Shown: positions 15,686 to 38,390, counted from the stretch's first letter. The stretch: 64,000 bases of DNA from Octopus sinensis (GCF_006345805.1 NC_043011.1:22332464-22396463), one strand, 5' to 3'. The notes: a model not told the origin generated them from the sequence alone. A program made the numbers and translations.

Positions 15686-17487
15686 TCAGCTATTTGCTTC
15701 AACTGCAATTGGCGCTCGATGGTGATAGGCTTGCTTCTGTCGTGTTTTTACAACATCATCTGGTGATGGTGTAGAGAAATCAAATGGTGTGATATGATGG
15801 AATAAAGTTGACTCCCAGTTTGTAGATATTCCATTCATTTGCACCTTATATGAAAATTTTGGATATTTCAGCTTCTTTGTAGAATTGCTGGAACACTTCT
15901 GTGCTCTGTAGGAAATTACTTTTCCAAATAAGGAAACAGGCTCTTTGAATGCAGTTTTCTGGATTTGCACATCAGGATCTTCTCTAGTTAAATATGTGTT
16001 GTTTTCTTTCTGGGAACAACTAGAATTATCATTATTAGTTTTGTGAACTGGAGTGCTTTCTGGATTGGGCTTAGTTTCCTTAGGTTTCTTGCATAAATCT
16101 TCAAGCCTATTTTCAGCAATGTAATCAGACTTGGGGCTAAGTTCAAGGTTTACTTGACTAATCAAACTTCCTAGAGAAAATGCAGAATCCAAACAGTCGT
16201 CATCTTTGAATGATGATTCTTTGAGTTCTTCTTCCTCGTTAACTTCTAGATTGTATTTAGAGTCATTGAGGTGAGAAGGGAAAGTAGTGTCATTTTCTTT
16301 CTTAGGAAAAGTAGAAAATTTATGATTAGTGAGATCACACAATGAAAATCCCGTAACAGTTTGAGGAGGAGGTGAACTATTTATATTTGAGCAAATCTCC
16401 TTTGGATTTTGCAAGGGATTCTTCTCAGATGTATTCTTAAGCAACTCAAGATGTTTAGAGGCACTCTTATTTTTAGATGGTCTCGAAAAATCAAATGTTT
16501 TTGCAAAACTACTTTTTGAAATATCTGAAGAAAACTGAATCGGTTTCTGAGTTTGTTTTTGTGAAGTTTTAAGTTTTTTGTCTTTCTTCACCGGTTCAGT
16601 ATCAAACAGGGAAACATCTGAATCAAGCTTAAAACGGGTTTTTGTTAAGTCAGCTAAACTTGTCTTATCTGTGTTCTTGGGAGAAAATTTTCTATTTTTG
16701 GAACAGTTTTCACAAGTTTCTTGTGGACAGGTTTCAGCACAACTACATTTATCTTTAGGTGGATCTTTTATACATTGTTTATCATCATTTGTCTTCTTGT
16801 ATCTCTCATTATCAAGATCACCAAGTGAAGACTTAAAACCACTTTCCTGTTTAATCAACGAAGACAAGCTAATTGGTTTATCTCCAATATCAGAACTGTC
16901 TTCATAATCTTCTAGCCATGTATTTTTTTCAATTCCATCAGACAAAGAATGACCAAATTTATTGACTGACGAAAATTTGGCATCTTTTTCCATTTGTTCT
17001 TTATTCTTTTTTGCTTTTTCAAACAAATTCATAAGTTCCTGCTTATTAGATCCATTTTTTAATTTTGGCTTTGTTACACTACTTACTGCAGCAGTGTTGC
17101 TATCAGTTGAAAGCTTCTGACAAAGTGAGGGTGACGAATTCCCAACCCCATGTGTCTCAAAATCGCCTTCCATTGTATGATTAGAAGGCAGTAAACAACT
17201 TTCCTGATTCTCTTCTTGAATGGAATTCTTACTCATTTTCTGATCTAATGATACTAGCTGATCTTCTTGACTATCTTCACTTTCAGAGGTTTTTCGCTGA
17301 AAGATCTCAACTTCAAAGTTGTCTGAAATTGCACTTTCATATGAAGAGCATTCCTCATCTCCTACACTATTCATTCTTCGACATGCAAATGTTTGAAAAT
17401 TCCTGTCTGAAAACTGATTACAATCTGTAGGACTTGTACAGTAATTTTGATTACAAAAACTATCATCTAATTCACATAGAGAAAAGT
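15686..17487 (-). CDS. HBS1L: Ski7-like (HBS1LV3-type) terminal exon of HBS1L; exosome/SKI adaptor region
   Basis: Track ORF of 562 aa (17374-15686) stays open upstream to 17488, with TAA just before. In-frame phase-1 acceptors lie at 17487 (gtaAG|AC) and 17424 (ctacAG|AT). The C-terminus ..EPVSLFGKVISYR..YPKFSYKVQ..ITPFDFSTPSPDDVVKTRQKQAY matches the Ski7/HBS1LV3 motifs. Confidence 0.9.
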
Positions 17488-17492
17488 CTTAC

Positions 17493-17681
17493 CTTACAAA
17501 AGCCAAAAATTAATATGAAGTAGTAGGAGCAGAAGTTTCAACCAATCAGAAACCAGACGATGGCAGCATATTCCACACATTACCAAAAATTTTAAATGGT
17601 AGAAGTAGGAGACAAGAGGGAGATGTCATGAAAGAAAAGAAGAAAAAAAAAAAGAAAAAAAAAGAAAGGCTCTCGTTAGAA
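17493..17681 (-). promoter_or_regulatory. Extended 3' splice-site region: branch point TTCTAAC, long pyrimidine tract, AG-exclusion zone
   Basis: TTCTAAC at 17681-17675 with branch A at 17676. A pyrimidine tract of about 40 nt starts at 17669. There is no AG on the minus strand from 17669 to 17495. Confidence 0.6.
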
Positions 17682-19289
17682 TGTTTATTATTATTTTAAA
17701 ATTCCAACTAAATAACCAAAAATATTTAGTATTTATTTCCATGAACACCAATAGAGGTGACATAGAAAATATTTACACCACTGCAATCCTAGTCAAGGCA
17801 CACAACACCTGCATCAGTCCATTAACTGGTCATCAAATACAACATTCATTTGTAAAAAAAACAAAAAAAAAACAAAAAACAAAAAAAACCCACAAAATTT
17901 TGCAAACACCAAAATTTTAATTTATAGTAAAATCAAGATAAAAACAGAAGATGCTACAAGTAAAATTATAGTTAAAAAGAGGTATCAACTTCCAAGAGCT
18001 GTTTACACAAAGTGTACAAAAGCTACACACATCTATCAAAGAAAATTTACAATTTTATAAACCTCCTTTTTTTTTATATATTATAAATGTAAATAAGAAG
18101 TTTAGACTAATTTGAATCAACTAAAACTAACCTGTAAATTGATTTCAATTGATAGTACATACCCACAAATATCTGGGGAACAATTTTTAATTTAATTCGG
18201 TTACAAGTATAATTCATCCTCATTTCAGTAGGTCATGAAAGGATGTGAGTACCACATTACAAGCTGATGAAAAACTCAGATATACACATATAGAAATTTT
18301 ACTACTTACAACAGTCAGCTATCATTTAGAGTTACGAATGCTGATTTAAGTGTTAGGTGCTTTTTGCCAGGAACACAATGCAGCTCTAGTTCCTAATGAT
18401 AATATTATATATTTCTAAAGACAGAATATAATCCGGTGTATGTAAGAAAGTCCAAATAATTGTAGTCTACAACTTAAGAATCTCAAATAGGGTCACATGC
18501 AGAAAAAATACGAGGAGGAAATCACTCAGTCACCACTTAGGAAATATCTACCTATTTTTAGAATTCACCATAAACATGAACCTCTGCATTGTCATTTAAC
18601 CTAATCTCCCTCACATTACGCCCTACTATCTTAAAACAGGAAGGAAGCATTGGACAATGTAGTGCTAGATATACAAAAAGATGCAGCTTGCACACTGTCT
18701 TCTTTGTTGAAATGCAAATGGACTTACTGGTCACTTGCCTATAAGATCTCAATCAACTTCATAAATCTTTTTGTTTGCCACAATTCAATCCAAATGGATG
18801 TGTACCCCTGCAGACAAACCCACAATATTTGCCTCTATTCCACACACTCTAGCATGTGCAAAAAGACATCAAATGCAGAAACTTCTGTAATCACATCCAT
18901 GCAACAAAGGACCCGTCTTGATTCTGTGATACTATCACTCTCAATCTGACCTTTATATTCATCAAACAGCTTTTCTCTACATCAGTATAAGTAGCAAATA
19001 ATGGAAAAATACAACAGTATATTCCAGACCAAAAATGAGAAAACTCTATAACTAAATATGACTCTCTTTTACAATATTTTAACAACAGTAGAAACAGTTA
19101 CAAACAGCTTTCTCATTATCAACTTCAGCAACCCCACATAAGTTTTTCTTAGAATACCTCCAATATGCTCTCTAATGTCACACATCAGTTGTCTATTGCT
19201 CTTATTCTTACATATAAGCCTTGATACATCAGTAGAACCTTAAACCACGAGACATGAGAACGCCCTGGCAAAGTTGCCTATTTACTGCA

Positions 19290-19555
19290 CTTATCTCGAC
19301 TGGCCTCTGTGCCGATGGCAAGTAAAAAGCACCATCCGATTGTGGCCGTTGCCAGCCTCATCTGGCACCTGTGCAGGTGGCACATAAAAAGCACCCACTA
19401 CACTCTCGGAGTGGTTGGTGTTAGGAAGGGCATCCAGCTGTAGAAACACTGCCAGACCAGACTGGGCCTGGCGCAGCCTCCTGGCTTCTCAGATCCCAGT
19501 TGAACTGTCCAACCCATGCTAGCATGGAAAACGGACGATGATGATGATGATGATC
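19290..19555 (+). mobile_element. (GAT)n-tailed retroposon (SINE or LINE tail), family 2
   Basis: GGAAGGGCATCCAGCTGTAGAAAC...CCAACCCATGCTAGCATGGAAAACGGACG followed by (GAT)n. Nearly identical to 24945-25242. Confidence 0.8.
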
Positions 19556-22409
19556 TCACATAAAATTTAAGAATTCTAAATAGACAACTCCGTCAAATAG
19601 TGCAAAAAGAGTTCTTTCTGAATTCTACCATCTCAGTTGTGCCTTGGGATCCAATTATATCTATATCTAATCCACCCTTCTTTCTCACAAATTACATGCT
19701 CACTGTTACAGCTAACCACACACACAATATCACCCTCCACACTTACTTAACCATTCACACTGGCATCACTCATATAACAACCTGTAGATCTACTACATCC
19801 AAAAATGTTCTTGGAATATCCTAACCTCATTCAAAAGTACCAAGACACATACACTATACATATTATCACCCACATACATACATGAAAAAACATCTAAAAA
19901 CTAATCTATTCTCTATAAAAGTTAACCATTGTAATCTCTGATGGTTTTTTTCATTATGACCAAGTATGTAGAACATATCTAAAACTGCAACCCACTTCAT
20001 GCCACCTTCAGCTAAATATCAACTGAATTGACTCTTCTTTCTCATGTTTTATCTAATGGAAGATGCAGACTTTTCATATAGTTGGGTTGGGCGTCACGAA
20101 ATCAACACGCAATGATATTCTCCAAATTGAATAAAACTAAATAGTTAATTTTTAAATATATCTACAATCTACAACTAGTTATAATATGCAAGTAATGATC
20201 CTTAAACAATATCTTTTCCATAAAAATTAATAAAAAAGGTAATTATAAAGCATAAACGACAGACATTTTCCTTAATTATATTCAAACTGTCAACAAGAAA
20301 CTTTATGTAAGCTATACACACAGGCAAGGGAGAGAGGAAAGTACTTTTTATTTTTTGTGTAGCTAATCAGGTGGTGCTATTTAGTTAAATACAACCTGAA
20401 GTATTTCTGATTAAAAATAATCCCAAGATATCTAAAGGAAGACAGCTCAACAGATTCACCTGTGAAACAAAATCATGTGAAGAACTTCACAGAGGCTGAG
20501 GAATTGTTTAAACTATTTATGTAAGTGAATAAGGTAAGACGTATTAGAAATTGGATTATGTTGATTCACAATTATTATTAACAATTATTAATTGATCCTT
20601 TTGGTCATGACACTTATTTTTTAAAAAATGAATTCAGGAATTTTTTGTTAATTATTTTTGAATTTTTTTGAAGTTTAACTATCTATCCATATTAACAACA
20701 AGGTTAATCCAGCAGCATTCATTTAAATAGAATAAAAAAATATAAGTTAACAATAGACAAACCTCTAACCATGATGTTGGGCACAGTGAACAGTCTGGTA
20801 CCTGGCTGCTCCTGTCTCAATGTACAATTTCTAGATTGAATAAGTTCTCACCCACATGCTATTGTTATTTCTAAAACTTTTGTGAAAACATACATCATCA
20901 AATTTCACTCTATTCTTCATATGTTTGTAAGCAAGGGGTGATGAAATATATAATTCAAAGATCCAAAATTGTAACTGACTGTTGAATTCAATGTATTCTA
21001 CCAACTTGAGACTTTCATCTACAGGGTATATAAGGTTGCTAGGTTTAATTTTTATCTTAAAGATTTGAAATTTAAAGTAAGACAATTTTATTCATCATTT
21101 ATAACATTAAAATTTGTTCAGAGCAGACATTGAAATAATGATGATGAGAATGATGATATTGAATTCACTAACTAAAAAACAAAACACTATTACTATTTAG
21201 TTTGAACAACTACCACAAGATGGTATGCTACTGTATGTGCGTCTTAGACAACAAAAAAAGGACTTTTGTTAAATTTGATATAAATTAGTAAAAATGTACC
21301 AATTAATGTAGTTGCTTTTTTAAATGGGAAAAGAGTGAAAAAAAAACTCCATTATTCTAGACTGAGAAATATGTAATAACATAATCATACATAAATCTTG
21401 GAATTTGCAGAACTGACTAACCCATATCAACAGGAGATACAGTGAGCATTAAAGCAAGGTCGAATGTAAGTAAACAATTCATTTACATAATCAACATCAT
21501 GACAATATGTGTCCTTATCAAACTTTAGTTAATGTGCAAAGATACTATCATTCTTAATGTACATTTGCTGCAGGTGTAAAACAACTGGATTTTCAATCTA
21601 GGGGACAGAAAAGCCAGTTTGTTGAGAGTAATGGATGACTATTTTGTTATATGCAGTATTGATGTTGAGTCAAATACTATGAACTAGAAGAACGGCAACA
21701 GGAACCCCATTATGTTGTATTCTTCCCTAAAAATACTATAGACACTTCCTTTACAGTTACCATGCGTCTCAATTGTGGCACATTGATTCTCAGATAACAA
21801 TGAAGGAGCTTTATCAGATTATATAAAAGGATGAGATAAAACTGAAGCAAGAGTGTAATGAAAGCTACAGCCTCAAAGTGACAACACTTCCCTACTCCCT
21901 CATAGTCAGTAAAATAAAACATCTACAGTGTAGCTGACTGGCCAACTATATCCATAAGCATTTATCTTCTACTAAATAAATAAATATTCTTTAGAGATTA
22001 AAATAGTAAAGCTAACAGCAGTAGTTTTCTTTCTAAGAAAAAAATTTCCTTTATGCAGTCGTAATCAATCCTCCACTCACTTAGAAGTTTATAGAAAGAT
22101 GGGTATTAAATTTTGAAAAACCAAATGCAACATCAGATTTTCTTAGCAATACTTATATCATTTTAACAGAGACTGAAATCCAAGGAGGGACTAAAAATGA
22201 CCAGCTTAATTTAGCAGCTCAACTAGAAATAACAAGAAATCTAAGGTAAATTCTAAATTAGACTGAAATACTTAAAGACATGCAAGATAATTTACATTAT
22301 TAGCTAAATACCATATCTCGATGTTTGCATTAGTAAAGTAGATATCCTCTATTTAACATGAAGACTAAAGACAAGATTAATTGAAAGACGAGCTGAAAAA
22401 GATATTCAC

Positions 22410-22457
22410 CTAGTGATTTACGTCCCTCTCTGGGTCGTCTCTGTGGTTTTGGTGCAC
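22410..22457 (-). CDS. HBS1L: HBS1-like protein, exon 5 ((G)APKPQRRPREGRKSL)
   Basis: Acceptor gatattgtttcAG, donor G|GTGAAT, 48 nt, phase 1-1. It keeps the frame between exon 4 and the terminal exon. Confidence 0.8.
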   Translation of the reverse strand: MHQNHRDDPERDVNH

Positions 22458-22552
22458 CTGAAACAATATCAAATGATCATAACAGTAACAATAATGGATG
22501 AAAATAAAGAATTTATAACATGTTTAATTTTCCCTTATATTCATATATAAGG

Positions 22553-23250
22553 TGCTGGCATGGCTGTGTGGTTAAGAAGCTTGCTTCCCAACTATGTGGT
22601 CTCAAATTTGGTCCCACAGTGCAGCACCTTGGGCAAATGTCTTCTACTATAGCCCCAGCTGACTAAAGCCTTGTAAGTGGACTTGGTAGATGGACACTGA
22701 AAGAAGCCCATTGTATGTGTATACCCTTTTCTTGACATCATGTGATGGCTGTAAATGAGTGTCACTATTATACATGCAGCATTGTTTGTTTCTAGTCTTC
22801 TGTGAAAAACATGTCTGGCCATGGGGGAAATATCACCTTGCTTAGAAACATGTGGGGCTGGCAACAGGAAGGGTAGCTAGCAGTAGAAAATTTCCCTGAA
22901 TAAATTCAGTCTGACACATGCAAGCATGGAAAAGTGTCTGTGAGGTAAGAAGCTTGCTTCCTAACCACATAGTTTCAAGTTCAGTCCCACTGTGTGGAAC
23001 CTTGGACAAATATCTTCTACTATAGCTTTGGGTCAACAAAAGCCTTGTGTATGGATTTGGTAGACAGAAACTGAAAGAAGCTGTTGTGTATATATGTGTG
23101 TGTGACTATGTTTGTCCCCTCATCACCACTTGACAACTAGAGTTGGTGTGTTTATGCCTTCCATAACTTAGCAGTTGAGGAAAAAAAATTTTTTTTAAAC
23201 CAATAGATGGTGCTCCAGCATGGCCACAGTCAAATTACTGTAATACGTAA
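22553..23250 (+). mobile_element. Two adjacent or partial tRNA-SINE copies in HBS1L intron 4
   Basis: Repeated head GCATGGCTGTGTGGTTAAGAAGCTTGCTTCC and core. Confidence 0.7.
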
Positions 23251-24144
23251 AAGAATAAAAGGAATTCAATGATAGTAATGATATATCTGATAACTCATTA
23301 TCCAAAATACTTGGGACTGAAAATATTTGATTTCAGCAAGACTGTATATTTTTCATCTTTAAGGTAGGATAACATGGGGATGGAACCCAAGTCTAAATAT
23401 GTTCTTCATTCACATTGCATAAAAAAAGTTTTTACATATGTTATGAAGACAGTTTATATAAATTTAATGCTAGTTCAGTTTCACTTTGAGAAGTTTTGTT
23501 TTTTACCAAAACAAATCTATGATGGTTTAGATTACAACAGCTGCCCATTTCCAGGGAACCTTCTAAGCACATTCTGAAATTTTCTATTTGACATTTCTCT
23601 CACTTGGAAAATATTTGGGATTTTGGAGGTTTTCAAATTTTTGAATTTTAGAGAAATTATTATCAACTACATATACATGTCCTTCGACTCTTTCTGTCCA
23701 AAAGATTTTTTTCACCCAATATTTACACATTGTTATTACACACTATTTATAACTTTATCTGCTTCGAAATCCACCATTCCAAAAAAGAATTGTGTGTGTG
23801 TGTATGTTTATGCATGCATGTGCACATACATATACACACAAGCCAACAACAGAGTCACTATGTGGTTGCTTGATTTACTAGAACTAACAGCCAAATATTC
23901 CTCAAATTAGATCCTTATTTGAAAGCAAAAAAAAAATGGTATGGATACATTGAATATTGTAGTTCTAGCCAGAATAAAGAAAAAAGTATGGACAATTAGC
24001 ATGCCACTGATCATAGGTTTGCTCAATTAGGTCTCTCTCTCTCAAACACACACACACACAGATACATATATGACATACTGCAGTCTTAAAGACATATAAA
24101 CATGTTATGCACACCCATACACACACATATACATATCTCATTAC

Positions 24145-24279
24145 CTGGTGTGGCAAGCAATTCATTTAAAGCAGCTTCTGTGTCATAGTTATGCCTTTTA
24201 ATGCACTCCACAAGGATATCATCTTGATGAATGTCCCCAAGCACCTCGTGAATCTTATCCAAACAGTGGTTTAAACGAG
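24145..24279 (-). CDS. HBS1L: HBS1-like protein, exon 4, HBS1_N (UBA-like) domain (ARLNHCLDKIHEVLGD...YDTEAALNELLATP)
   Basis: Lies inside track ORF 24086-24328. Acceptor tttttattcAG, donor G|GTAATG, 135 nt. It shows the RL..CLD...EVLGD...D...AL..LL pattern of HBS1_N. Confidence 0.95.
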
Positions 24280-24944
24280 CTGAATAAAAATGGCAAAAGA
24301 AAGAGAAACAAATCAAATAAAAACTCATTTGTATATATTATGATTACACTGTGTAACACAACTTTTGTCTTTGGGCAGTAACTTGTTTCCTATTTGCTTA
24401 ACCCTAGAAAGTATGAAAAATGGCAAATATTTCCTTCAAACTTTGCTTTTGTTATATTTATTCAAACCTTAAAGAATCCCTCTCATCACCTGGTTATGAT
24501 ACTCCCCCAACTACTCCTGCTCACGATCAAAGACGCACATATTGTCAGCCACTAAAGGACATGCTCAAGTGGTTATGGTCAAGCAACTGACAAACAAATC
24601 TGTGGTATTAAGCAGAATATTTGCTATAATGGTATTTCTGCTTCAGCAACTCAAAGCTGAATCTGTTTGAAATGTAATGAAAAATAGATCAGTTTCAAAA
24701 CATTGATGTCCAGGTCAATAAAAGCAAAGTTTGAAGGGAATAGCAGTTATTTCCTTTGATTTCTAGATAAAAGCAAATAGGAAATAACACTTACTGACCA
24801 AAGACAAAAAAAAAACAAAACAAAATAAAATAAAAATTTTGTTAGTGTTATTAACTGCTACTTTGTTTTAATGTGTGACTATAGTAATGGACAAGAGAGA
24901 AACAGGAATGATACCCCATATAACATGAGAAACTTATATAACCA

Positions 24945-25242
24945 ACGTAAAAAGCACCATCCGATTGTGGCCGTTGCCAGCCTCGTCTGGCCCCTGTGCT
25001 GGTGGCACGTAAAAAGCACCATCCGACCGTGGCTGTTTGCCAGCCTCATTTGGCACCTGTGCAGGTGGCACATAAAAAGCACCCACTACACTCTCGGAGT
25101 GGTTGGCGTTAGGAAGGGCATCCAGCTGTGGAAACACTGCCAGAACAGACTGGGCCTGGCGCAGCCTCCTGGCTTCCCAGACCCCAGTTGAACCATCCAA
25201 CCCATGCTAGCATGGAAAACGGATGTTAAACGATGATGATGA
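24945..25242 (+). mobile_element. (GAT)n-tailed retroposon, family 2, with a duplicated ~60-bp internal unit
   Basis: Tandem AAAAAGCACCATCCGA..GCCAGCCTC..TGGCAC units, then the family-2 tail. Confidence 0.8.
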
Positions 25243-26363: not shown

Positions 26364-26513
26364 CTTCATCAAAACTATTGTATGTCACTTTCTTGGAAGA
26401 ACATTTTGGTGAATCTGGGGTAATGATTGGTGGTTCCACATTTGATGGAGAATCACTACTAATGTAAGAACCAAGGTCAAGATTGGACTTCCTGGGAAAT
26501 GTGAACTGGGCCA
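26364..26513 (-). CDS. HBS1L: HBS1-like protein, exon 3 ((V)AQFTFPRKSNLDLGSY...TYNSFDE)
   Basis: Acceptor ctttcAG, donor G|GTAAGA, 150 nt open in phase 1-1. It starts with the AQF motif that follows CISP.T in HBS1L. Confidence 0.9.
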
Positions 26514-26672
26514 CTGAAAGTAAATAAATAAATGATAAGAAATTTATGAAGAATATTTCTGAAATGTTAAAAAAAAAAAAGTTAGAATAGTATTACACAG
26601 AGATTTAATTGTTATAATTTGAAAGCATTCTCATTCTTTTCTAAGATTTTCATTTGGTAAAATATCAAAATA

Positions 26673-27045
26673 GGTGCAGGCATGGTTGTATGGTAAAAAG
26701 CTTGCTTCCCAACCACATAGTTTTGGGTTCAGTCCCACTGCATGGCACCTTGGGTGAGTGTCTTCTACTATAGCCTCAGGCTGACCATAGTCTTGTGAGT
26801 AGATTTGGTAGACAGAGAATGAAAAAAACCTGTTGTGTGCATGTGCGCATTTGTCCCCTACCACCACTTGACAACTGGTGTCGATGCTTATGACCCCTAA
26901 CTTAGCGGTTCAGCAAAAGAGACCAACAGAATAAGTACCTGGTTGAAAAGAAATAAAAATAAGTACTGGGGTTGTTTCATTCGACTAAAAATTCTTCAAG
27001 GCAGTGTCTCAGCATGGCCCCAGTCTAATGACTGAAACAAGTAAA
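26673..27045 (+). mobile_element. tRNA-derived SINE, dominant family
   Basis: Full head, core and tail. Confidence 0.8.
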
Positions 27046-27109
27046 AAAAAAAACAGTATCTTAAATTTGTTACTGTGGATTAAACAACATATTTGTTTTA
27101 ATCATTATT

Positions 27110-29424: not shown

Positions 29425-29818
29425 ATTTTACTTGTTTCAGACATTAATCTGTGGCCATGCTGGGCACCAACTTGAATTTTTAGTTGAATGAATCAACTGC
29501 AGTACTTATTTATTTTGTTATGTCTGGTACTATTCTATCAGCCTCTTTTTGCTGAACAGCTAAGTTATGGGAACATTAACACACCAACACCGTTTGTCAA
29601 GCAGTAGTGGGACACAAACACATACACAAAGATGCATACATACATGCACACACATGGGCTTCTTTCAGTTTCTGTCAACCAAATCCACTCATAAGTCTTT
29701 GATCAGCCCAAGGCTATAGAAGAAGTCACTTGCCCAAGGTGCTACACAATGAGACTGAACTTGAAAGCATGTGGTTGGGAAGCAAGCTACCTACCAAACA
29801 ACCACGCCTGTGCCTATG
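29425..29818 (-). mobile_element. tRNA-derived SINE, dominant family
   Basis: Reverse-complement copy about 200 nt downstream of exon 2 in transcript orientation. Confidence 0.75.
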
Positions 29819-30026
29819 TGAATTTTGCTGATAACAAATAGTTAAAGGTCATTGAAGAAGCATTGGAATCAGTTACTTTAGCTGAACTGTAAGCTACTAA
29901 ATGAAGCAAATTATTTTAATAATACTATGTCTTATTCTAAGTAGAGTTGATCATGTGATTATAAATAAAAAAAAAATACAGAATAAGATCTTCAGGGAAG
30001 TGAACATTAACAGATAAACAGCATAC

Positions 30027-30104
30027 CAGTTCCAGGAGAGATGCAATATTTATCATCAAATGACTGGCCATAACAATCTTCAACATCATCGTCATCAAAA
30101 AACT
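30027..30104 (-). CDS. HBS1L: HBS1-like protein, exon 2 ((E)FFDDDDVEDCYGQSFDDKYCISPGT)
   Basis: Acceptor ttctaattccAG, donor G|GTATGC, 78 nt, phase 1-1. The acidic YGQS..DD.YCISP motif is typical of metazoan HBS1L. Confidence 0.93.
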
Positions 30105-30656
30105 CTGGAATTAGAAATTAAAAATATATAATGAGTTGATTAGTTTTTAAATAAAATTTTGTGCTAAAGGTAGGTTTTATAAATAGTGTATAGCAATGAA
30201 ACAAAATAGTGTAGAACAGAGAAACATTATTATGACAATTTTTTAACATACATGATTCATGCTAGCATGGGTTGGATATGAACAACAAATGGAAGAAAAT
30301 ATAAACAACTATGTATCTCCTCTGCAGCCAGACACTTGTTTCTGTTTCTCTGTCACACTCTAACCTCTCATCACTTGGCACAAGGCTACCTCCTCCAATG
30401 CCTCCCCACCCTCTCAAACAATCTTTGTCTTGTGGAGTTACTTGATGACCCTACCAGTGCTGGTGCCACATAAAATGTGTCCAGTCCACAATGTAAAGTG
30501 GCTGGCATTTGGAAGAGCATCTAACCATAAAAACTATGCCAAAACAGTGAAGCCCGGTGCAGTCTTCTGGCTTGCCATCTCCTGTCAAACCATCCAACCC
30601 ATGCCAGCATAGAAAAACGGACATTAAGTGATGATGATGAAATAACCAAGACTATT

Positions 30657-31168
30657 TAATCCTTTAGCATTCAGATTACTCTTTCAAATGTAATGCTTAT
30701 TCATTTAGTTCTTTTGAATTTATCTTGCAATTTCAAGATTTCAATGATGAGATTGTTTAGTTTTAGAATGACATTGTAGGGTAGGTGTGAGAGGCCAGAT
30801 CTGGTTAGTTTGAACACAAAACAGAATATCTGGGCCAGATGTGGCTAGTTTTGATTACCCAGACCTAATATCAAGACAACTGGCTGTGACCATCTTATCT
30901 TTGTATGCAAAGCATGCCAATATGATTTTCCTTTTTGTTTAATCCTTTAGCATTTAAACCAGCCATATCTGGCCCAAATACTCTATATATTTTATGTTCA
31001 AGCTGACTGGTTCAGGCCTCCCACATCTATCTTACAATATCATTCTAAAACTAAACAATCACATCCTTGAAATCTTGAAGTTACAAGATAATGCAAGATT
31101 AATTCAAAAGAATGTGATTGAATAAGCATTATATTTTGACAGAATAATCTGAATGCTAAAGGGTTAAG
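30657..31168. mobile_element. Two inverted copies of a piggyBac-type (TTAA) MITE
   Basis: TTAATCCTTTAGCATTCAGATT.. (30657-30852) and its reverse complement (30939-31168, ending GAATGCTAAAGGGTTAA). Confidence 0.7.
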
Positions 31169-32664
31169 TAGGGTTTATGAGGCAGATTTATCTGCTAGTT
31201 CTAGCAGTCTAAAGACTGCACAGAGATTCCCTCATTGCAGTTGGTAATTTGTGAAGGACAAAACAATGACTGTCAGGTTAAGGTGCTCAACCACTGACTA
31301 CATGGTCTTGACTTTAAACTTTCTAAACTATTGACCTTTTGGACAAAGTTCATAACTGTTCTAGCTTGCCTGGATGACAGAATTAGATCTTAACACTATC
31401 TCACAGCACAGCAGTCAACAGTAAAGAGGGCGTCTAGTTGAGGAAACAACTGCCCCAATGAGACCCTCCATATGGTTACTCAACCAAATCTCCCTCAAAT
31501 CATACTGCCATCTTTAAAAAGAAAGGGCAAATTTGGATAATGTAGTCCAAAATAACACTGATTTATTAAAAGAGGGGATGGTTCTCAATCATAAATCTGC
31601 TTGATCAGGGCTGACCTGAAGCTAAGCAACTGTCCCCCACACTCCAATAAACATTCCACACATAGTAACACAAGAAACTAATAAAAGATGACAGAAGATT
31701 AAGAGAGACAGTAAAAGATTTATTGCAGGTAGAGCTGAAAGAAAAGATATGAAAATAGAACAGTTTAGAGGGGAAAATCTTGTAAGTCTTCCATGACTAT
31801 ATTGTTTACGGCATACATGCAAATCACCAGATGAGATCAATGGTTAATCCAGCCTTTCAATAAAGTTACTAAACTACATTTTTCTTTGTGTAAGTTCATA
31901 AGTACATACACATACTCCTTGCATTATGAAGGGATTGCATTCCTAAAAAATGTTGCCATGTGTAATTCTATAATGTGAAACCTATATTCGCAATGACTTC
32001 CATCAATGGGAAAATATTACAGAATTCCACATTATGGCAAGATTTTCAGTAATGCAATGTTTTTGTGTGTATATATCATTACAAAGATTTTAAATTGTTT
32101 TGTTCCTTCATGGAAAAGTGGATGTGAAAACAGATGATGATGTGTATGTAAAACTACATTATCTAATGTGCTCCTCCTTGTGTTTTAGTACCAGTCAGTT
32201 CCGATCCAGGTTTTTGATCAAAGGTATTCAAGCTACAACCATTTTATCTTTCGTTCATAGTGTACCTAGGACCATTATCTAATGTGTCCTTCCTTGTTCT
32301 TGTAGCTTAGTCCCAGGTCTGTCCAGATTCAGTACACCTCTAAATGTATAAGCACAGGCATGGCTGCATGGGTAAGAAGATCGCTTCCCAACAACATGGT
32401 GTCAGGTTCATGTTCATGGCAAGGTACCTTGGGCAAGGGGTTTCTACTATAGCTTTGGTTTGACCAAAGCCACTGTCATAAATAGCATGATTTGTGTTTG
32501 TATCTAAAGTTTGTCCTCATTAGATGTTTCATTGCTCATGATTTACTCTTGCCATCTTGATTGCTTTTATTGTAGATCATACTGTAAAGTATGCTGTATT
32601 GAATGTTAAATAAAATGTATCATAAGGTCACGCCCATCTTTTGTAAATTGTCTTATTTCAATTT

Positions 32665-33340
32665 ATTTAACATTCAATGGAGTTGCCTGTTTTCAATGCA
32701 TCATAGACAATATGATTAGAGAAGATCAAGAATACTTTTGCATACTTGGATAATATTACCATCTGCGGAAAGAATCAAGAAGACCATGACAAAAACCTCA
32801 TGCACTTCCTTGATTGTGCTAAGAAGTATAACATAACCTTCAATGAAAAGAAGAGTAATTATTGGTGCAAAGGAAATCAAGTATCGAAAGGAAACATCAT
32901 ATCTGATCCTGAGAGATTGCAACCATTGAAGGAACTTGCTGCCCCACATGACTCCAAAACTCAAAAAAGGGTTGCTGGCATGTCCTCTTACTACTCGTCA
33001 TGGATTTTGCATTTTTCTGATAAAATCCTTCCCCTGATAATAAATAAAACATTCCCCTTACCAGTAAAAGTGAAAAATGTCTATGAGTATCTGAAAGCAG
33101 AAATCGCAAAAGCAATTGTTGTGACCTAGTGGCTGAGATGGATGCCTCAGATATAGCCATTGCAGCAACTCTTAATCAATGTGGAAAACCCATTGTCTTT
33201 TTCTCAAGATCATGGAGTTCAAGTGAAAGGAATCACTCATCAGTTGAAAAAGAGGCTTACACTATCGTAGAGGCTCTTCAAAAGTGGAAGCATTATCTTC
33301 TTGGCAAGCATTTCAAATTAATCACAGACCAAAAGAGTAT
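32665..33340 (+). mobile_element. Ty3/Gypsy LTR retrotransposon RT-RNase H fragment (pseudogenised)
   Basis: Track ORFs 32746-33129 and 33129-33374 give LDNITICGK..EDHDKNL, DPERLQPL, DASDIAIAATLNQ.GKPI.FFSR and EKEA..IVEAL.KW.HYL.G.HFKLITDQKS. Confidence 0.92.
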
Positions 33341-33342
33341 TA

Positions 33343-33508
33343 CTTGTAAAAGAAGAAAATCCAGTAAGACATAGGCAAAGCAGTGGAAGCTGATCTCAAA
33401 ATGTTGAGCCTCATGGATTTGATGACAAAGTACTGAGACAATTGATGAATTGCTTTCCTCAAGAAGCATTTTGTCTATGCTTGTACGTGATGGACACTGT
33501 CTGTACAC
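33343..33508 (+). repeat. LINE 3'-end copy forming an inverted pair with 37061-37214
   Basis: GAAAATCCAGTAAGAC..GCTGATCTCAAAATGTTGAGCCTCATGGATTTGATGACAAAGTAC aligns to the reverse complement of 37061-37214. Confidence 0.85.
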
Positions 33509-35099
33509 ACACAGAAAACTGTTGAATAATGAGAATGAGTGCTCAAGTGCTCAACACCGCATTGGTGGATAAAATTTCTCTATTTGTGTATTAGCCTTAA
33601 TACACACATATTATTTTAATGAAGCTGAGGAAAGTTCGCAAATTGCATTTAGAGTTGCATGTAACCATCATCAGACAGTAGTAAATACAGATTAATAAAA
33701 CAATTTATAAATCAAAATTTATAAACTAATTTGTTAGTCTATATTACCACAATTGTCTGATGAATGGTTATGTGAAACTCTGAATAATATTTTGTGAATT
33801 TTTCTTGGCTTCAATAATGTAATATTTTTAGTCTATTTTTGATATGAGTGCTATTTTTTTCTTATCTTGTTTTGTACCTATATGCTTACTTGAGAGAGAG
33901 TGAGATGCAGGCATGGCTGTGTGAGAAAGAAGTTTGCTTCCCAACATGGATTCATATTCAGTTCTATGGCATGGTATCTGGGGCAAGTATTTTTACTATA
34001 GCCCTGAGTTAACCTAAGCCATTAAACAAGCAATGTCATTCTTTCCTAATCTTCCATGAAAAACCACATCTGGCAATAGGGAAATGTTACCTCACTGGGA
34101 AATAGGTACAGATTGGTGACAGGTATCTGGCCTTATGAATTGTCTGATTCATGCTATATGGAAAAGTGAATCTTAAATTAATAATGATGACGAAGGTGTG
34201 TGTATGTATATACACACACATCATCCTCATCATCATTTTACCATTTGTATTCCAGACTGGCATGGGATGGATGATTCTACAAGATCAGATGAGCTGGAGG
34301 ACTGTACTGAGCACCAGTGTCTACATTGGAAAGGTTTCTGTGGTTGGATACCCTTCCTATGACCCCAGCACTTGTGTGGTCACTAAGTAGCTCAAAAGAC
34401 AAGACCCTTGAAAAGTTGAGAAGTAGTATTGACAGATGTGACTTTGTGCAAAGCGCTGTGAATCAAAAATATGACAGGACATGTATTTTGCTGTAGAAGA
34501 GATACATGGTTACTTCAAAAAGAAAGAGTGAAAGGATGGAGGAAATGAAATATCAGGATGTACCCTCAAGGAACAAGATAGTGGATAAAGAGAGAATAGG
34601 GACAGCGAACTGAAGCTGGGGGGAGTAGGTTTGTGCAAGTGTGAAAGGAGAGTAACAAATAGTAGAAATGAGGATAGAAGTGAATGCTGTAGATGCTGAG
34701 AACAGGTGGTAAAGACATAGACCATGTAAATCTCACTTTGGGTGAAAGTAAGGAAAATGGTTCTGGGAGGAGGAAATGATAGGTGGCAATATATAAAAAG
34801 ATTATTAATATAATAAAACTGTAGATAGATGAGAAATAGGGAGATGATGTGAAATATGGAAGAGAGAGAGAGAGAGAGAGTACAATGACAGGGATGGAGG
34901 TCAGAGGTATGTAAGGGTGGATATAATGACACAAAAACAAAATGGAGTGGAGATCAATGGCAGATATGAAAGGGTGTTCAGTGGAAAGGATGATGTGAAT
35001 GTGGGATGGGTGCAATGGAAGTGGTTCTAAAGAGAAGGATAACTGGTAGCATAAAGTGAGATGGAATATAGGTAGTTTTGCTCTCAAATAATTACAGCA

Positions 35100-36330
35100 G
35101 TTGTAATTAAAGGGGTAAAGAAGAGATGGATGTTAAGAAGATGAGCTGTGGGGAAGATGTAAGAGACACAGACTGAATACAGTGGTATAGGCAATTGACA
35201 AAATGCCTTTATGGATGGGTCTTCTCGAACACAGCAAATCACCTATCATCTCAGTACCTTAGTCGTTTCTTTTGTGAAGCTCAACAACCAGAGGTCAGTC
35301 TTCAGTACTTCATCCGATGTCTTCCAGTGTCTCCCTTTTCTACAAGTTCCATCCACTTTAAGGAACTAGGACTTCTTTATGCAGCCATCCTCATTCTTAT
35401 ACATCACATAACCATATCAACATAGTCTTCTCCCTTTTACACTACACCTGATATTTCTTATGCACATTGATGTTGCATGTTCAATGGAATACACTAGCTT
35501 CATTTCTTTCAAGCTTTCATGTATCCTCTGTATTTATGGCTCATGTTTCACTATCGTGCAGCATTGCTGTTCTTACCCAAGCTTCATATAATCTGCCCTT
35601 CACTTTGAAAGAGAGGCCTTTGGCTGCCAACAGAGGTAATATCTCTCTGAAATTTTTCCAGCTGTTTTGTATTCTGGCAACTATAATTTCAAAACATATT
35701 CCTCCACTGCTAATTAGGTCACCTAGGTATCAGGAACTATCTATTACCTCTAAGGACACTCTTGGATATTCAAGAAAGTCTATTTCTTGTATGTTCTTAA
35801 GTTTTACTGCTCCTGTGCATCTGCCACAAACAAAGTCTGTTAATTTCCTGTGATTCCACTGTACTGGGTACACTGTAAGGAATTTCTACCTATACCTTCT
35901 CTACATAATGAACAAGACCAGTTTTCTGAAGGGATGAGCATACTGTCTGTTTTCCTGCTTACTAGATCTTAGGTCATTGCTAAGTTAACTTCAAGGCACT
36001 ATGATTCCAGGTTTTGCATCTGCACCTGGAATATCTTTTCTCATTCCATTTCAGATTCAGCTATAAGAACAAGGTCATTGTAGAGGACATTCCATAGGTA
36101 ACCAGTCTTAAATTCTTCTGTTATACCCTGAAGAACTATGATAAACAGGAGGAAACTGAAAACCAAACCCTGGTAAAATCTTACCTGTAACTAAGTTCAC
36201 TGTTGTATTCATTGCCAACTTTAACCTTACTGACAGCATCCATGTACATGACTTGGATGACTCTTACCAGCCATTCATCAACCTCTGGCTTCCACAACTA
36301 GCATATATATAGATACATCATCATCTTCAT
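35100..36330 (-). mobile_element. Decayed RTE-like LINE ORF2
   Basis: The minus strand gives ICGRCTG..YLGDLISSGG..ARI..SWKNFREILPLL..KGLS.KVKGRLY.ACVRTAMLH.SETWA. Track ORFs 35195-35853 are its antisense. Confidence 0.8.
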
Positions 36331-38347
36331 CATTTAACATTCGCTCTCCATGTGGGTGTGGGTTGGATGGTTTGACAGGATCTAATGCCCCATGTCAGTT
36401 TTGGCATGGTTTCTACAGCTGGATGCCTTTCCTAACACCAACCACTTTATAGTGTGTACAGGGTACCTTTTTGTACCACCGGCACTTGCGATGTCACTAA
36501 GTACTTGCAAGACAAGAAAGAACAAGGATAAAAACCCCTAAATTGCGACTGAGCGAGGGGAGGAGGGAATATTTAAGAGGGGTGAGAAGTGGCTACCTCA
36601 TTATATAAGGGAATACCTAGGAAGTAAAGAAGATGGTAATGATGAGGTGCTAGAGAAAGCCCTCAAGGGACAAAAGATGATACAAACAGTGGATTAAGGG
36701 TGTAAGGGGAGAGTAATAGGAGTGGGGGGATGTAGCTTCATGGAAAATATTGGTATGGTGAGGAAGGTGAAGATAGAAGAAACTTAGGAATGATAGATCA
36801 GGGAGAAGGCGGTAATAAGCAAGGTGTGGGTGCGGTGATGAGGGAGATGTAGAGGTCCTGAAGGGTGGCTACAGGGAAGGATTTGGTCGCAGATACAAAA
36901 GACCACAAAGAATGATAGCAGATACAAATGTCTGGGAAGAGATGATGACAATGAAGGATAGCTGGGGGGGGGTATAGGCAGTAACTGGCAGTGCAAAGAG
37001 TTAGGGGATGGATATTAGGAGCACAGGGAGGTGAGATGAATACTTGATGGGGTAGAGTAGGTGTGCAGACAGTGTCCAGCATACACAAAATGCTCCTTGA
37101 GGAGAGCAATTCATCAACTGTCTTGGTACTTTGTCATCAAATCCATGAGGCTCAACATTTTGAGATCAGCTTTCACTGCTTTGCCTGTCTTACTGGATTT
37201 TCCTCTTTCACAAGTTCTGTGACCAGCATCACATGACCACAGTAGTGCAGACACATCATGCACACTACATGATTCCTCTTATACTTATTTTTCTATCGGC
37301 ACACTAAGAGTTTGCAGTACATGCATACATACATATCTATATATATATCTGTTACTTGTTTCAGTTATTTCTGTGGCCATGCTGGGGTACCACCTTAAAT
37401 GGTTTTAGTTGAACAAATTGACCCAAGGACTTATTTTTTTAAAAGCCTATTACTTAATCTATTGGTATCTTTTGCCAAACCGCCAAGTTATGGGGGAAAA
37501 CACTCACTCACACACACACACAATGGTCCACAAAATCTACTTCACAAGGCTTTGGTTAGCCTCAGGCTATTTAAGAAAGCATTTTCCTAAGGTGCAACAT
37601 ATATATATATGTATGTATGTGTATATATATAGACAGTCCTCGTCTGATACAATCTATCGATCTATGTGCGTGGTTTTATGAAACCTTTCCAATGTAGCGT
37701 AATTTTATGAGCTAAAAACGCAAAATCCGGAATTCTAACAAGCCATCCACGTTAAGTTGGATATAAAAATTACTTTTATATTTACACACACACATATATT
37801 CATCTACATATACAACATATAAATATAATATATACACACATATAATACATATGTACGCACATCGACATATATACATATACTTAAACATATAAGTATATAC
37901 ACACACACATATGTGTGTTTGTGTGTAGGTTATTAGAAAATAAATGTTTTAAGTATTAGAGTGTCCCATACTCATTTAAAATACACGATCAGATGATTAC
38001 TGAAATCAAGAAAAACCTTCGTCCCAAATTGATCACAATAAACGGCTTCCATTGTGTTTGCGTGTGTGTGTGTATATATACACACATTTTCTGATTACCT
38101 CATTTCTTCTAATATATAAATATATATATATAATATATATATTTATATATACACTCACACACATACATTAAGTTGTTCTGGTGAAATAAAGTAGTATAAC
38201 TGAAGAGAAATGCTTGAAAAGGTTAAGAAAAAAGAATTGTGCTTGAGAGAAGTTATTTATAGCCAGTGAACAGTTTTCATGTCGCAAGGTTCGCGCTGTG
38301 TAGTAATGATGACAGAAACAAAACTGGATCTTGAATCCACAACTTAC

Positions 38348-38390
38348 CGTCTTCATAGTTCATCGTCCTTACACTTCGATGTCGTGCCAT
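38348..38390 (-). CDS. HBS1L: HBS1-like protein, coding exon 1 (MARHRSVRTMNYED + G)
   Basis: ATG at 38390. The translation matches the Hbs1 N-terminal signature MxRHRNVR. It ends G|GTAAGT (phase 1 donor). Confidence 0.95.

What the first reader, a model, noticed from the sequence alone, without database searches (positions are those of the whole stretch)
15686..38390. Cephalopod Ski7: HBS1L spliced to an exosome-adaptor terminal exon
Five exons encoding the Hbs1 N-terminus splice in frame to a large last exon (454 + 1802 nt = 752 codons, about 751 aa; 730 aa with the 17424 acceptor). It ends with blocks like those of human HBS1LV3 as I recall them: EPVSLFGKVISYR, YPKFSYKVQ and PFDFSTPSPDDVVKTRQ (15787-15737). 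HBS1LV3/Ski7 links the SKI helicase complex to the cytoplasmic exosome. The ORF alone looks like an uncharacterised low-complexity protein, so automated annotation could miss a Ski7 equivalent. The system is known in vertebrates, fungi and plants; I cannot tell whether it has been described for this lineage.
Basis: partly seen in the sequence, partly recalled or inferred. Interest (0 to 1): 0.8.

Follow-up and report, generated by a model that had tools for sequence, protein, structure and literature searches.

The report
Octopus Ski7 isoform of HBS1L

Summary
Six minus-strand exons with AG/GT borders (43+78+150+135+48+1802 nt) give a 751-aa ORF. It is 91% identical to the O. bimaculoides RefSeq model XP_014788281.1 ("uncharacterized protein LOC106882204 isoform X1"), which uses the same junctions.

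- **N-terminus:** it is HBS1L (Pfam HBS1_N; PDB 5lzw HBS1L, E=5.5e-21).
- **Terminal exon alone:** its only PDB hit is human SKI7/HBS1L isoform 2 (9g8m_E, E=4.9e-7).
- **Mollusc-only C-terminal profile:** it hits human SKI7 (1.8e-17) and then only yeast Ski7 (about 3e-3 to 1e-2).
they align with the three exosome-binding patches of human SKI7 and its SKI2-contacting helix.
- **Canonical isoform:** in O. bimaculoides a 722-aa HBS1_N+GTPase product starts at the same coordinate. The GTPase exons lie outside this window.

The isoform is widespread in molluscs, echinoderms, corals and vertebrates, usually named "uncharacterized". Brunkard & Baker 2018 reported mollusc SKI7-like proteins and included this O. 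bimaculoides protein in their supplementary alignment.

Splicing, the 3' end and binding remain untested; no RNA data were available here.

The parts
38348..38390 (-). Exon 1, coding part (ATG at 38390-38388; 43 nt; MARHRSVRTMNYED). The 5' UTR extent is unknown.
   Evidence: tblastn with P0001 aa 1-14 is 100% identical. The donor is GTAAGT at 38347.
30027..30104 (-). Exon 2 (78 nt), acidic stretch plus the conserved YGQSxDDxYCISPGT motif of HBS1L
   Evidence: acceptor TTCCAG, donor GTATGC. It aligns with human HBS1L in 5lzw_jj.
26364..26513 (-). Exon 3 (150 nt), AQFTF motif and linker
   Evidence: acceptor CTTTCAG, donor GTAAGA.
24145..24279 (-). Exon 4 (135 nt), core of the HBS1_N helical domain (aa about 86-140)
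   Evidence: Pfam HBS1_N scores 27.7 bits against a cutoff of 26.4. PDB hits are 1ufz_A at E=2.4e-9 and 5lzw_jj at E=5.5e-21.
22410..22457 (-). Exon 5 (48 nt, GAPKPQRRPREGRKSL). It ends in phase 1 and is the last exon shared with the Ski7-type model.
   Evidence: acceptor TGTTTCAG, donor GTGAAT.
15686..17487 (-). Ski7-specific terminal exon, coding part (1802 nt including the TGA stop at 15688-15686; aa 152-751). It is mostly low-complexity or disordered and carries the adaptor motifs.
   Evidence: It is an open frame of 600 codons and 91% identical to P0001 aa 152-742. Its PDB hit is 9g8m_E human HBS1L isoform 2, E=4.9e-7. Pfam finds nothing above threshold. The O. bimaculoides and Acanthosepion gene models both join exon 5 to this acceptor.
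17424..17425 (-). It is a candidate only.
   Evidence: The site exists, is phase 1 and is conserved in O. bimaculoides. No gene model seen here uses it.
15905..15943 (-). SKI7-like motif (EPVSLFGKVISYR, aa 667-679). It is the counterpart of the human SKI7 helix 555-572 that sits in the RRP43-MTR3 cleft.
   Evidence: Alignments are. The human contact residues are from PMC11540850. The metazoan consensus A+PShFAahL is from PMC6143672. Octopods have one extra residue (V) after the Pro.
15839..15865 (-). YPKFSYKVQ (aa 693-701). It is the counterpart of the human SKI7 loop 582-593 (YKTFLYSRQVQ) between RRP43 and the RRP45 C-terminal tail.
   Evidence: F, Y and Q are invariant in the six-species alignment and conserved across molluscs.
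15725..15793 (-). Patch 4-like motif and following helix (ITPFDFSTPSPDDVVKTRQKQAY, aa 717-739). It is the counterpart of human 602-616 (CSL4 binding) and 617-632 (helix contacting SKI2 RecA1).
   Evidence: 51 of 147 representative relatives carry the same motif 9-30 aa from their C-terminus without a GTPase G1 motif. Yeast Ski7 structures are hit through this motif.
16319..16351 (-). GFSLCDLTNHK (aa 531-541), the likely counterpart of human SKI7 helix H1 (GSLSSLAFHK)
   Evidence: HMMER aligns vtgfslcdltnhkfst with LTG-SLSSLAFHKASPT. This is inference only.
16151..16183 (-). AFSLGSLISQV (aa 587-597), the best candidate for the SKI3-docking helix (human H2 LSLSELIAETI, L454/I458). It is one of six SLxxL motifs.
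   Evidence: L and L/I positions are invariant across octopods, a clam, a fish and human in A1. SLxxL occurs 6 times against 0.46 expected (the pattern was chosen post hoc). Which copy, if any, binds SKI3 was not tested.
15531..15536 (-). Candidate poly(A) signal AATAAA, about 150 nt after the stop
   Evidence: It is not conserved in O. bimaculoides, which has AACAAA, so the assignment is weak.

Best explanation
This is the 5' part of the octopus HBS1L gene on the minus strand. [quoted passage not shown]

Gene structure: splicing exon 5 (ending at 22410) to the acceptor at 17487 and terminating in that exon gives a 751-aa protein. It has the HBS1L N-terminal domain, a long disordered middle and a C-terminal adaptor module, and it has no GTPase. 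Skipping this exon and splicing on to downstream GTPase exons, which lie beyond window position 1, would give canonical HBS1L.

Mechanism, inferred from the human and yeast structures:
- The last 90 or so residues wrap the cytoplasmic exosome core through three short patches: an RRP43-MTR3 helix, an RRP43/RRP45 loop and a CSL4-binding PFDF motif.
- The terminal SPDDVVKTRQKQAY helix touches the SKI2 helicase.
- One or more upstream SLxxL(I/T) helices dock on SKI3.
- The shared N-terminal domain contacts the 40S subunit.
- Together these tether the SKI2-SKI3-SKI8 helicase to the exosome for 3'-5' decay of ribosome-bound mRNA.

Shown here: the exon structure, the ORF, its conservation, and homology to HBS1L (N-terminus) and to solved SKI7/Ski7 proteins (C-terminus).
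Inferred: that the splice is actually used, where the transcript ends, and every binding step.
For: - Exon structure: exact exon-intron structure with canonical splice sites and a single stop.
- Ortholog: the same structure appears in the collinear O. bimaculoides locus, where a RefSeq model of 742 aa is 91% identical.
- Cuttlefish: the Acanthosepion model P0005 also runs from exon 5 into the Ski7-type exon.
- Canonical isoform: in O. bimaculoides, a 722-aa product with HBS1_N, GTP_EFTU, D2 and D3 starts at the same coordinate and runs past the Ski7 exon.
- N-terminus: HBS1_N is above Pfam's cutoff and HBS1L 5lzw_jj scores E=5.5e-21.
- C-terminus: the sole PDB hit is human HBS1L isoform 2. A mollusc-only profile gives human SKI7 at 1.8e-17 and four yeast Ski7 chains at 2.5e-3 to 9.5e-3, with the next hit at 0.26.
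- Motif positions: they match the structurally defined human contact patches and the published metazoan consensus.
- Spread of the family: 548 representative relatives, with 51 of the 147 retrievable top hits carrying the C-terminal P4-like motif without a GTPase. Taxa include bivalves, gastropods, a chiton, sea stars, corals, lamprey and fishes.
- Coding constraint: a 600-codon ORF against at most 167 codons in shuffles, only one in-frame indel against O. bimaculoides, and dN/dS of 0.54.
Against: - No transcript data were available, so the 22410-to-17487 junction and the 3' end rest on gene models from other species.
- The candidate AATAAA is not conserved.
- The GTPase exons are not in the window or in the 10 kb downstream of the ortholog's Ski7 exon. 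Alternative splicing with canonical HBS1L is therefore shown only by the O. bimaculoides gene calls.
- The acceptor at 17487 has a weak pyrimidine tract (TTTGGCTTTTGTAAGGTAAG).
- Pairwise dN/dS is only moderately below 1, and the two species are too close for a strong test.
- The SKI7-like motif deviates from the consensus by a one-residue insertion.
- The near-universal AF after the P4 helix is AY in octopods.
- The SKI3-docking helix cannot be assigned uniquely.
Confidence: 0.9

Rival explanations
1. The large ORF is an independent gene, or a transcribed intronic ORF, encoding a lineage-specific low-complexity protein. On this reading it is not spliced to the HBS1L N-terminal exons, and an ATG at 17374 would give 562 aa.
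For: - The ORF has its own in-frame ATG.
- A 559-aa product starting at that ATG is on record from a Logan assembly of another octopod (P0002). Prokaryote-style gene calling on a 4-kb contig would start at that ATG in any case, so this is weak support.
- Pfam sees no domain in the exon.
Against: - The frame stays open for 37 codons upstream of that ATG, exactly to a phase-matched AG acceptor.
- The O. bimaculoides and cuttlefish models join it to exon 5.
- In bivalves, gastropods, a chiton, sea stars, corals and vertebrates, the same C-terminal motifs sit in single proteins that begin with the HBS1L N-terminus.
Confidence: 0.03
2. The exon is mainly a non-productive or decoy terminal exon. Its use would down-regulate canonical HBS1L by premature polyadenylation, and the protein product would have no adaptor role in octopus.
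For: No expression or protein data are available here. dN/dS is only 0.54 against O. bimaculoides, and the acceptor is weak.
Against: - The three exosome-contact patches and the terminal helix are conserved from octopods to bivalves, fishes and human, while the rest of the exon diverges freely. That is the signature of selection on the protein, not on the act of termination.
- The zebrafish P4-like peptide pulls down 7 of 10 exosome core subunits (PMC7924785).
Confidence: 0.04
3. In octopus the Ski7-type exon is also, or mainly, included internally through a donor upstream of the stop. That would give a long protein with both the Ski7 motifs and the GTPase, as in plants, many fungi and the Patiria miniata model.
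For: Patiria miniata 'HBS1-like protein isoform X1' (P0068, 1344 aa) has a P4-like motif at residue 738 and a G1 motif at 927. Plant SKI7 retains the GTPase.
Against: - The motifs lie within 35 residues of the stop, and the conserved octopod tail (HHRAPIAVEANS*) runs to the stop in all three octopods.
- The O. bimaculoides calls are 742 aa without a GTPase and 722 aa with one, and 722 aa is too short to include this 600-codon exon.
Confidence: 0.03

Closest known systems
Human HBS1L isoform 3 (HBS1LV3 / HBS1L3 / SKI7; PDB 9g8m-9g8p chain E; Kalisiak 2017, Kowalinski 2016, Koegel 2024)
   Same: - The N-terminal exons are shared with HBS1L.
- A single large alternative terminal exon replaces the GTPase.
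- A disordered middle carries SLxxL-type helices.
- The C-terminal order is the same: SKI7-like motif, then F-Y-Q loop, then PFDFxxxSPDD(I/V)VKxxQKxA helix.
- Sizes are similar (751 aa against 632 aa).
   Different: - Overall identity is only about 25% in the C-terminal 215 aa.
- Octopods have one extra residue in the SKI7-like motif, AY instead of AF after the terminal helix, and a 10-12-aa C-terminal extension.
- There are cysteine-rich stretches not seen in the clam, fish or human sequences I aligned (A1/A2).
- The spacing between the H1-like and the best H2-like helix is about 55 aa, against about 20 aa in human.
Zebrafish Ski7 (ski7-specific exon 5 of hbs1l; Cabrera-Quio 2021, PMC7924785)
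   Same: [quoted passage not shown] The P4-like peptide binds the exosome core experimentally.
   Different: The zebrafish function is shown in vivo (oocyte-to-embryo RNA tuning). Nothing is known about expression or phenotype in cephalopods.
S. cerevisiae Ski7 (PDB 5g06, 5jea, 8qca, 8qcf)
   Same: It is the adaptor between Ski2-3-8 and Exo10. The P4 motif (FNRPSPDDIIQSAQLNAF) is recognisably homologous to the mollusc profile, at E of about 3e-3 to 1e-2.
   Different: Yeast Ski7 is a separate paralogous gene that arose after whole-genome duplication. It keeps a GTPase-like domain and has its exosome- and Ski-binding regions at the N-terminus. Its Ski3-binding elements are not conserved with metazoans.
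Mollusc 'uncharacterized protein LOC...' Ski7-like models (O. bimaculoides XP_014788281.1, Aplysia XP_005104902.1, Mizuhopecten XP_021367803.1; Brunkard & Baker 2018, Suppl. Data Sheet 3)
   Same: The window gene is the ortholog of XP_014788281.1: 91% aa identity, a collinear locus and identical exon junctions. These proteins were already assembled as metazoan SKI7-like sequences.
   Different: The species is different. The window protein has 9 extra residues (SCLLPSNHT). The published listing gave no gene structure, motif-by-motif mapping or cephalopod-specific comment.

Membership tests
SKI7 / HBS1L isoform 3 (metazoan Ski7-like exosome adaptor) | N-terminus identical in kind to HBS1L (HBS1_N domain and the conserved MxRHRxVR...YCISPxTAAQF segment) | tested here: met
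   Pfam HBS1_N scores 27.7 bits against a cutoff of 26.4. phmmer against PDB gives HBS1L 5lzw_jj at E=5.5e-21 and 1ufz_A at 2.4e-9.
SKI7 / HBS1L isoform 3 (metazoan Ski7-like exosome adaptor) | No translational GTPase domain in this isoform | tested here: met
   Pfam on the exon and on the full 751 aa finds no GTP_EFTU. There are no G1/G3 motifs anywhere in the window.
SKI7 / HBS1L isoform 3 (metazoan Ski7-like exosome adaptor) | Made from the HBS1L locus by an alternative exon, with the same 5' exons also serving the canonical GTPase isoform | tested here: met
   This was met in the collinear ortholog only. O. bimaculoides L001 has a 742-aa call (HBS1_N only) and a 722-aa call (HBS1_N+GTP_EFTU+D2+D3) that share the same start, and the second runs past the Ski7 exon. 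In the window itself the GTPase exons are out of range.
SKI7 / HBS1L isoform 3 (metazoan Ski7-like exosome adaptor) | SKI7-like motif (metazoan consensus A+PShFAahL; human 555-572, RRP43-MTR3 cleft) | tested here: met
   KEPVSLFGKVISY aligns with human ARPSAFASTLCLR and with bivalve GPSVIGKSLLF / DPSSIGNALSL, with P and S conserved. It deviates by a one-residue insertion after the Pro.
SKI7 / HBS1L isoform 3 (metazoan Ski7-like exosome adaptor) | Patch 4-like motif PFDFxxxSPDDIVKxNQ close to the C-terminus (CSL4 binding) | tested here: met
   PFDFSTPSPDDVVKTRQ lies at 15787-15737. F, D, P, S, P, D, Q and A are invariant across 10 mollusc sequences. It matches human and yeast Ski7 structures.
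SKI7 / HBS1L isoform 3 (metazoan Ski7-like exosome adaptor) | Significant sequence homology to experimentally characterised SKI7 proteins and to nothing else | tested here: met
   A mollusc-only profile (A5) against PDB gives 9g8m_E human SKI7 at 1.8e-17, yeast Ski7 chains at 2.5e-3 to 9.5e-3, and an unrelated next hit at 0.26.
SKI7 / HBS1L isoform 3 (metazoan Ski7-like exosome adaptor) | SKI3-docking helix (human 451-464, L454/I458) | tested here: inconclusive
   There are six SLxxL motifs. One (GFSLCDLTNHK) aligns with human H1. AFSLGSLISQV aligns with fish PSLADLISQ and clam LSLADLAKK, but MAFFT places it at a different human segment than H2. No unique assignment is possible.
SKI7 / HBS1L isoform 3 (metazoan Ski7-like exosome adaptor) | The spliced, polyadenylated mRNA exists (exon 5 to Ski7 exon junction) | not testable with these tools
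   No RNA-seq is available. The only support is gene models in O. bimaculoides and Acanthosepion that use the junction.
SKI7 / HBS1L isoform 3 (metazoan Ski7-like exosome adaptor) | Physically bridges the exosome core (EXO10) and the SKI2-SKI3-SKI8 complex | not testable with these tools
   This needs pull-downs, co-IP or complex modelling. It is known for human, zebrafish and yeast.

The most novel reading that the evidence does not exclude
Octopod Ski7 may differ mechanistically from the vertebrate protein in its disordered middle. It carries six SLxxL(I/T) motifs, which could give multivalent or alternative docking on SKI3. It also has octopod-specific cysteine clusters (CSCAETCPQETCENC, aa 399-413, and C-x6-C-x4-C-x5-C at the start of the exon) that could form a small metal-binding or redox-sensitive module. 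The optional 17424 acceptor would remove the first SLxxL motif and three of those cysteines, which would give two adaptor forms.
Probability: 0.1. Interest if true: 0.35.

Novelty: already known. Interest (0 to 1): 0.12.

Why it matters
The Ski7 adaptor couples the SKI helicase to the cytoplasmic exosome for co-translational mRNA decay. This shows that the octopus HBS1L locus has the same two-product design as vertebrates, fungi and plants, which adds one more data point for its antiquity.

The practical value is annotation. In molluscs these isoforms are almost all labelled "uncharacterized protein", and one is labelled as a bacterial-type adhesin. That hides a core RNA-decay factor from functional and comparative studies. 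Renaming them "HBS1L isoform / SKI7-like" would be justified. It does not open a new question, because the system, its motifs and its wide distribution, including this octopus ortholog, are already published.

Tried and rejected
1. **Search for canonical GTPase exons in the window.** All were negative in the window and in the 10 kb downstream of the ortholog's Ski7 exon. One weak hit at 10005-9919 (E=0.03) has no counterpart in L001, so I dismissed it as chance. Linker exons of the canonical isoform could still lie in 1-15685, and I could not detect them without the octopus canonical protein.

2. **The search for homologous proteins with the 151-aa N-terminus.** It returned only one protein, the cuttlefish P0005. 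The word index missed even P0001, so this search did not deliver the canonical isoform.

3. **Exact look-up of the spliced 751-aa protein.** The contiguous 562-aa ORF, which the tool does allow, is not on record. The window's species therefore stays unidentified beyond 'an Octopus close to O. bimaculoides', at 87-94% nt identity including introns.

4. **Pfam on the terminal exon alone.** It found only a sub-threshold NUP210 Ig match (14.5 bits against a cutoff of 27), which I rejected as noise. This explains the 'uncharacterized' naming.

5. **dN/dS by region.** There were too few substitutions for regional conclusions. The '400..-110' bin gives 1.5 from only 7 changes.

6. **Rfam and tRNA scans of the window.** Nothing was found.

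7. **Structure prediction.** I did not run it. A single-chain model of short binding motifs would not test binding, and no multimer tool is available.

Full report

Yes. On the minus strand there is an open frame of 600 codons ending at a TGA at 15688-15686. The longest open stretch in 30 shuffles of the window was 167 codons.

The frame stays open for 37 codons upstream of the first ATG (17374), up to a phase-1 AG acceptor whose exon starts at 17487. A second phase-1 acceptor gives an exon start at 17424.

tblastn with the best database relative and direct reading of the borders give five upstream exons: 38390-38348, 30104-30027, 26513-26364, 24279-24145 and 22457-22410. Their lengths are 43+78+150+135+48 = 454 nt. 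Each internal exon has an AG acceptor and exons 1-5 each have a GT donor.

Joined to 17487-15686, they give 2256 nt, which is 752 codons with one terminal stop and a 751-aa protein. The three quoted peptide blocks are at 15943-15905, 15865-15839 and 15787-15737.

**2. What is it?**

*Closest relative.* The terminal exon is 91% identical to a 742-aa O. bimaculoides RefSeq protein, 'uncharacterized protein LOC106882204 isoform X1' (P0001). That protein carries Pfam HBS1_N and uses the same six exons and the 17487-type acceptor. The 9-aa length difference is one in-frame indel.

*Collinearity.* The window is collinear with that locus at 87-94% nucleotide identity, introns included. It therefore comes from a closely related Octopus species.

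*Other cephalopods.* A third octopod ORF (P0002, 84%) keeps the frame. A cuttlefish model named 'HBS1' (P0005) also runs from the exon-5 sequence into the Ski7-type exon.

*N-terminus.* The 151 N-terminal residues are HBS1L. Pfam HBS1_N is above threshold, and PDB hits are mammalian HBS1L at E=5.5e-21 and the HBS1L N-domain 1ufz.

*Terminal exon.* It has no Pfam domain. Its only relative among 177,635 PDB sequences is 'Isoform 2 of HBS1-like protein', the SKI7 chain of the human exosome-ribosome supercomplex (9g8m_E, E=4.9e-7).

*Independent test of the family.* I built a profile from mollusc C-termini only: three octopods, six bivalves and Aplysia (A5). It finds human SKI7 at 1.8e-17, then four yeast Ski7 entries at 2.5e-3 to 9.5e-3 through the P4 motif. 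Nothing else scores below 0.26.

**3. Locus logic.**

In O. bimaculoides two products are called from the same start coordinate. One is the 742-aa Ski7-type product. The other is a 722-aa product with HBS1_N, GTP_EFTU, D2 and D3 that continues past the Ski7 exon and off the end of the fetched locus.

The Ski7 exon is therefore an alternative terminal exon lying inside the span of canonical HBS1L, as in human and zebrafish.

I found no GTPase exon in the window or in the 10 kb after the ortholog's Ski7 exon. The canonical 3' exons therefore lie beyond window position 1, which is unsurprising given cephalopod intron sizes.

**4. How it most likely works (inferred by homology).**

Koegel et al. 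2024 (PMC11540850) define these elements in human SKI7:
- residues 1-144, shared with HBS1L (the paper's SKI7-40S construct);
- two helices, H1 and H2 (451-464; L454 and I458 in a SKI3 TPR cleft);
- EXO10 patch 1, a helix at 555-572 (RRP43-MTR3);
- patch 2, a loop at 582-593 (RRP43/RRP45 C-terminal tail);
- patch 3, at 602-616 (CSL4);
- a conserved helix at 617-632 that touches SKI2 RecA1.

The PDB chain is the 369-632 construct. By my own offset estimate from the construct boundaries (chain position is about residue minus 364), the aligned segments correspond as follows:

| Octopus segment | Human segment | Human role |
|---|---|---|
| EPVSLFGKVISYR | ARPSAFASTLCLR | patch 1 |
| YPKFSYKVQ | YKTFLYSRQVQ | patch 2 |
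| ITPFDFSTPSPDDVVKTRQKQAY | ITPFDFKSASPDDIVKANQKKAF | patch 3 plus the SKI2 helix |

The motifs also fit the metazoan consensus published by Brunkard & Baker (A+PShFAahL; IaPF[D/R]F[K/D][S/T]aSPDDIV+A). Two small octopod peculiarities stand out: one extra residue after the Pro of the first motif, and AY in place of the nearly universal AF.

Upstream, GFSLCDLTNHK aligns with human H1 (GSLSSLAFHK). The protein holds six SLxxL motifs against 0.46 expected from composition, with 0 of 20,000 shuffles reaching six. I chose that pattern after seeing it, so the count is indicative only.

The same enrichment is seen in the clam and fish proteins. AFSLGSLISQV is the best SKI3-helix candidate, but the assignment is not unique.

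**5. Evidence for selection.**

Against O. bimaculoides, the exon has 68 substitutions in about 1770 nt (roughly 4%). Flanking intron blocks show 6-13% divergence with many indels. The exon has a single in-frame indel and dN/dS of 0.54.

This pair is too close for more. The real evidence is deep conservation of the C-terminal 90 residues, while the middle is unalignable between classes.

**6. How widespread, and is it new?**

A profile search of 1.84 billion representative proteins found 548 relatives. The table lists 150; the 147 of them held on file were scanned. Of these, 51 end with the P4-like motif and lack a G1 motif, 21 are canonical GTPase forms, and one (Patiria miniata isoform X1) has both.

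Named examples include Mya, Dreissena, Ylistrum, Mytilus, Ostrea, Ruditapes, Aplysia, Nucella, the chiton Liolophura, Asterias, Montipora, lampreys and many fishes.

In invertebrates the names are almost always 'uncharacterized protein'. The Mytilus edulis copy is called 'serine-rich adhesin for platelets-like'.

The identification is not new, however. [quoted passage not shown] Their Supplementary Data Sheet 3 alignment contains XP_014788281.1 from O. bimaculoides, the ortholog of this gene, together with Aplysia, Mizuhopecten and Lingula sequences.

No paper in the searchable library mentions Ski7 together with octopus, or HBS1L together with cephalopods, in its main text. The cephalopod case has been listed but never discussed.

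**7. What remains open.**

- Use of the splice junction and the choice between 17487 and 17424 are untested. Both database models that span the junction use the 17487 type.
- The 3' end is uncertain. AATAAA at 15536 is 150 nt past the stop but reads AACAAA in O. bimaculoides. ATTAAA at 15372 and AATAAA at 15120 are alternatives.
- All protein-protein contacts are inferred.

**8. Verdict.**

The gene is an ordinary ortholog of a known, broadly conserved isoform, and the main value is an annotation fix. Interest is low (0.12).

The least ordinary reading still open is that the octopod-specific cysteine clusters and the multiple SLxxL helices give the adaptor lineage-specific properties. I put that at about 0.1.

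Noticed in passing
window 32716-33371 (+ strand), within 32345-35133: A frameshifted LTR-retrotransposon pol fragment (RVT_1 C-terminal part, then RT_RNaseH at E=1.4e-21). It lies antisense in HBS1L intron 1, inside a stretch of about 2.8 kb that has no counterpart in the collinear O. bimaculoides locus (L001 13449/13466 are adjacent). That suggests an insertion in the window's lineage or a deletion in the other.
   Followed up: partly
window 40175-43797: About 3.6 kb upstream of the HBS1L start has no counterpart in O. bimaculoides (L001 8006/8007 are adjacent). ORFs there had no Pfam hit. The nature of the indel is unknown.
   Followed up: no
window 57453-57770, 47898-48295, 26667-27059, 22935-23185, 8078-8436, 4381-4620, 1232-1642 (and L001 about 800-1195, 18165-18550, 23520-23907, 38140-38548): A dispersed repeat of about 300-400 nt is present in many copies at 66-80% identity in both the window and the O. 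bimaculoides locus, mostly in HBS1L introns and flanks. It looks SINE-like or MITE-like and was not classified.
   Followed up: no
window 53758-54165 and 60355-60866: Long microsatellite arrays: a TCTA/TCTATCTATCTG-type array, and a (TA)n / 26-nt TATATATATACACA-type array of about 500 nt. They generate spurious long ORFs of YIYIYI-type translation.
   Followed up: partly
window 58473-58844 (-) and 61995-62618 (-): Two ATG/TTG ORFs of 123 and 207 aa. From memory, the first resembles the N-terminal HTH part of a mariner-type transposase, and the second ends in a GIY-YIG-like ...VVYSIRC...YTGETSRS... segment. Neither had a Pfam hit, and the first, the only one I searched against PDB, had no PDB hit either. 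They are probably decayed mobile-element remnants.
   Followed up: partly
window 16703-16747 (-) and 17400-17485 (-): Cysteine-rich stretches inside the Ski7 exon: CSCAETCPQETCENC (aa 399-413), and C-x6-C-x4-C-x5-C near the exon start. They are conserved among the three octopods, although O. bimaculoides has GSC for CSC. They are absent from the clam, fish and human sequences aligned here. There was no domain hit.
   Followed up: no
window 15531-15536 (-) versus L001 about 31057: The only canonical AATAAA close to the stop is AACAAA in O. bimaculoides, and the following A-run differs by 4 nt. The true poly(A) site of the Ski7 transcript may be elsewhere.
   Followed up: partly
P0153 (Mytilus edulis XP_071145021.1) and P0068 (Patiria miniata XP_038057817.1): Two annotation oddities among relatives. 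The M. edulis Ski7-like isoform is named 'serine-rich adhesin for platelets-like'. A sea-star HBS1L model of 1344 aa contains both the P4-like motif (residue 738) and the GTPase G1 motif (927), so either the exon is included internally in that lineage or the model reads through.
   Followed up: partly
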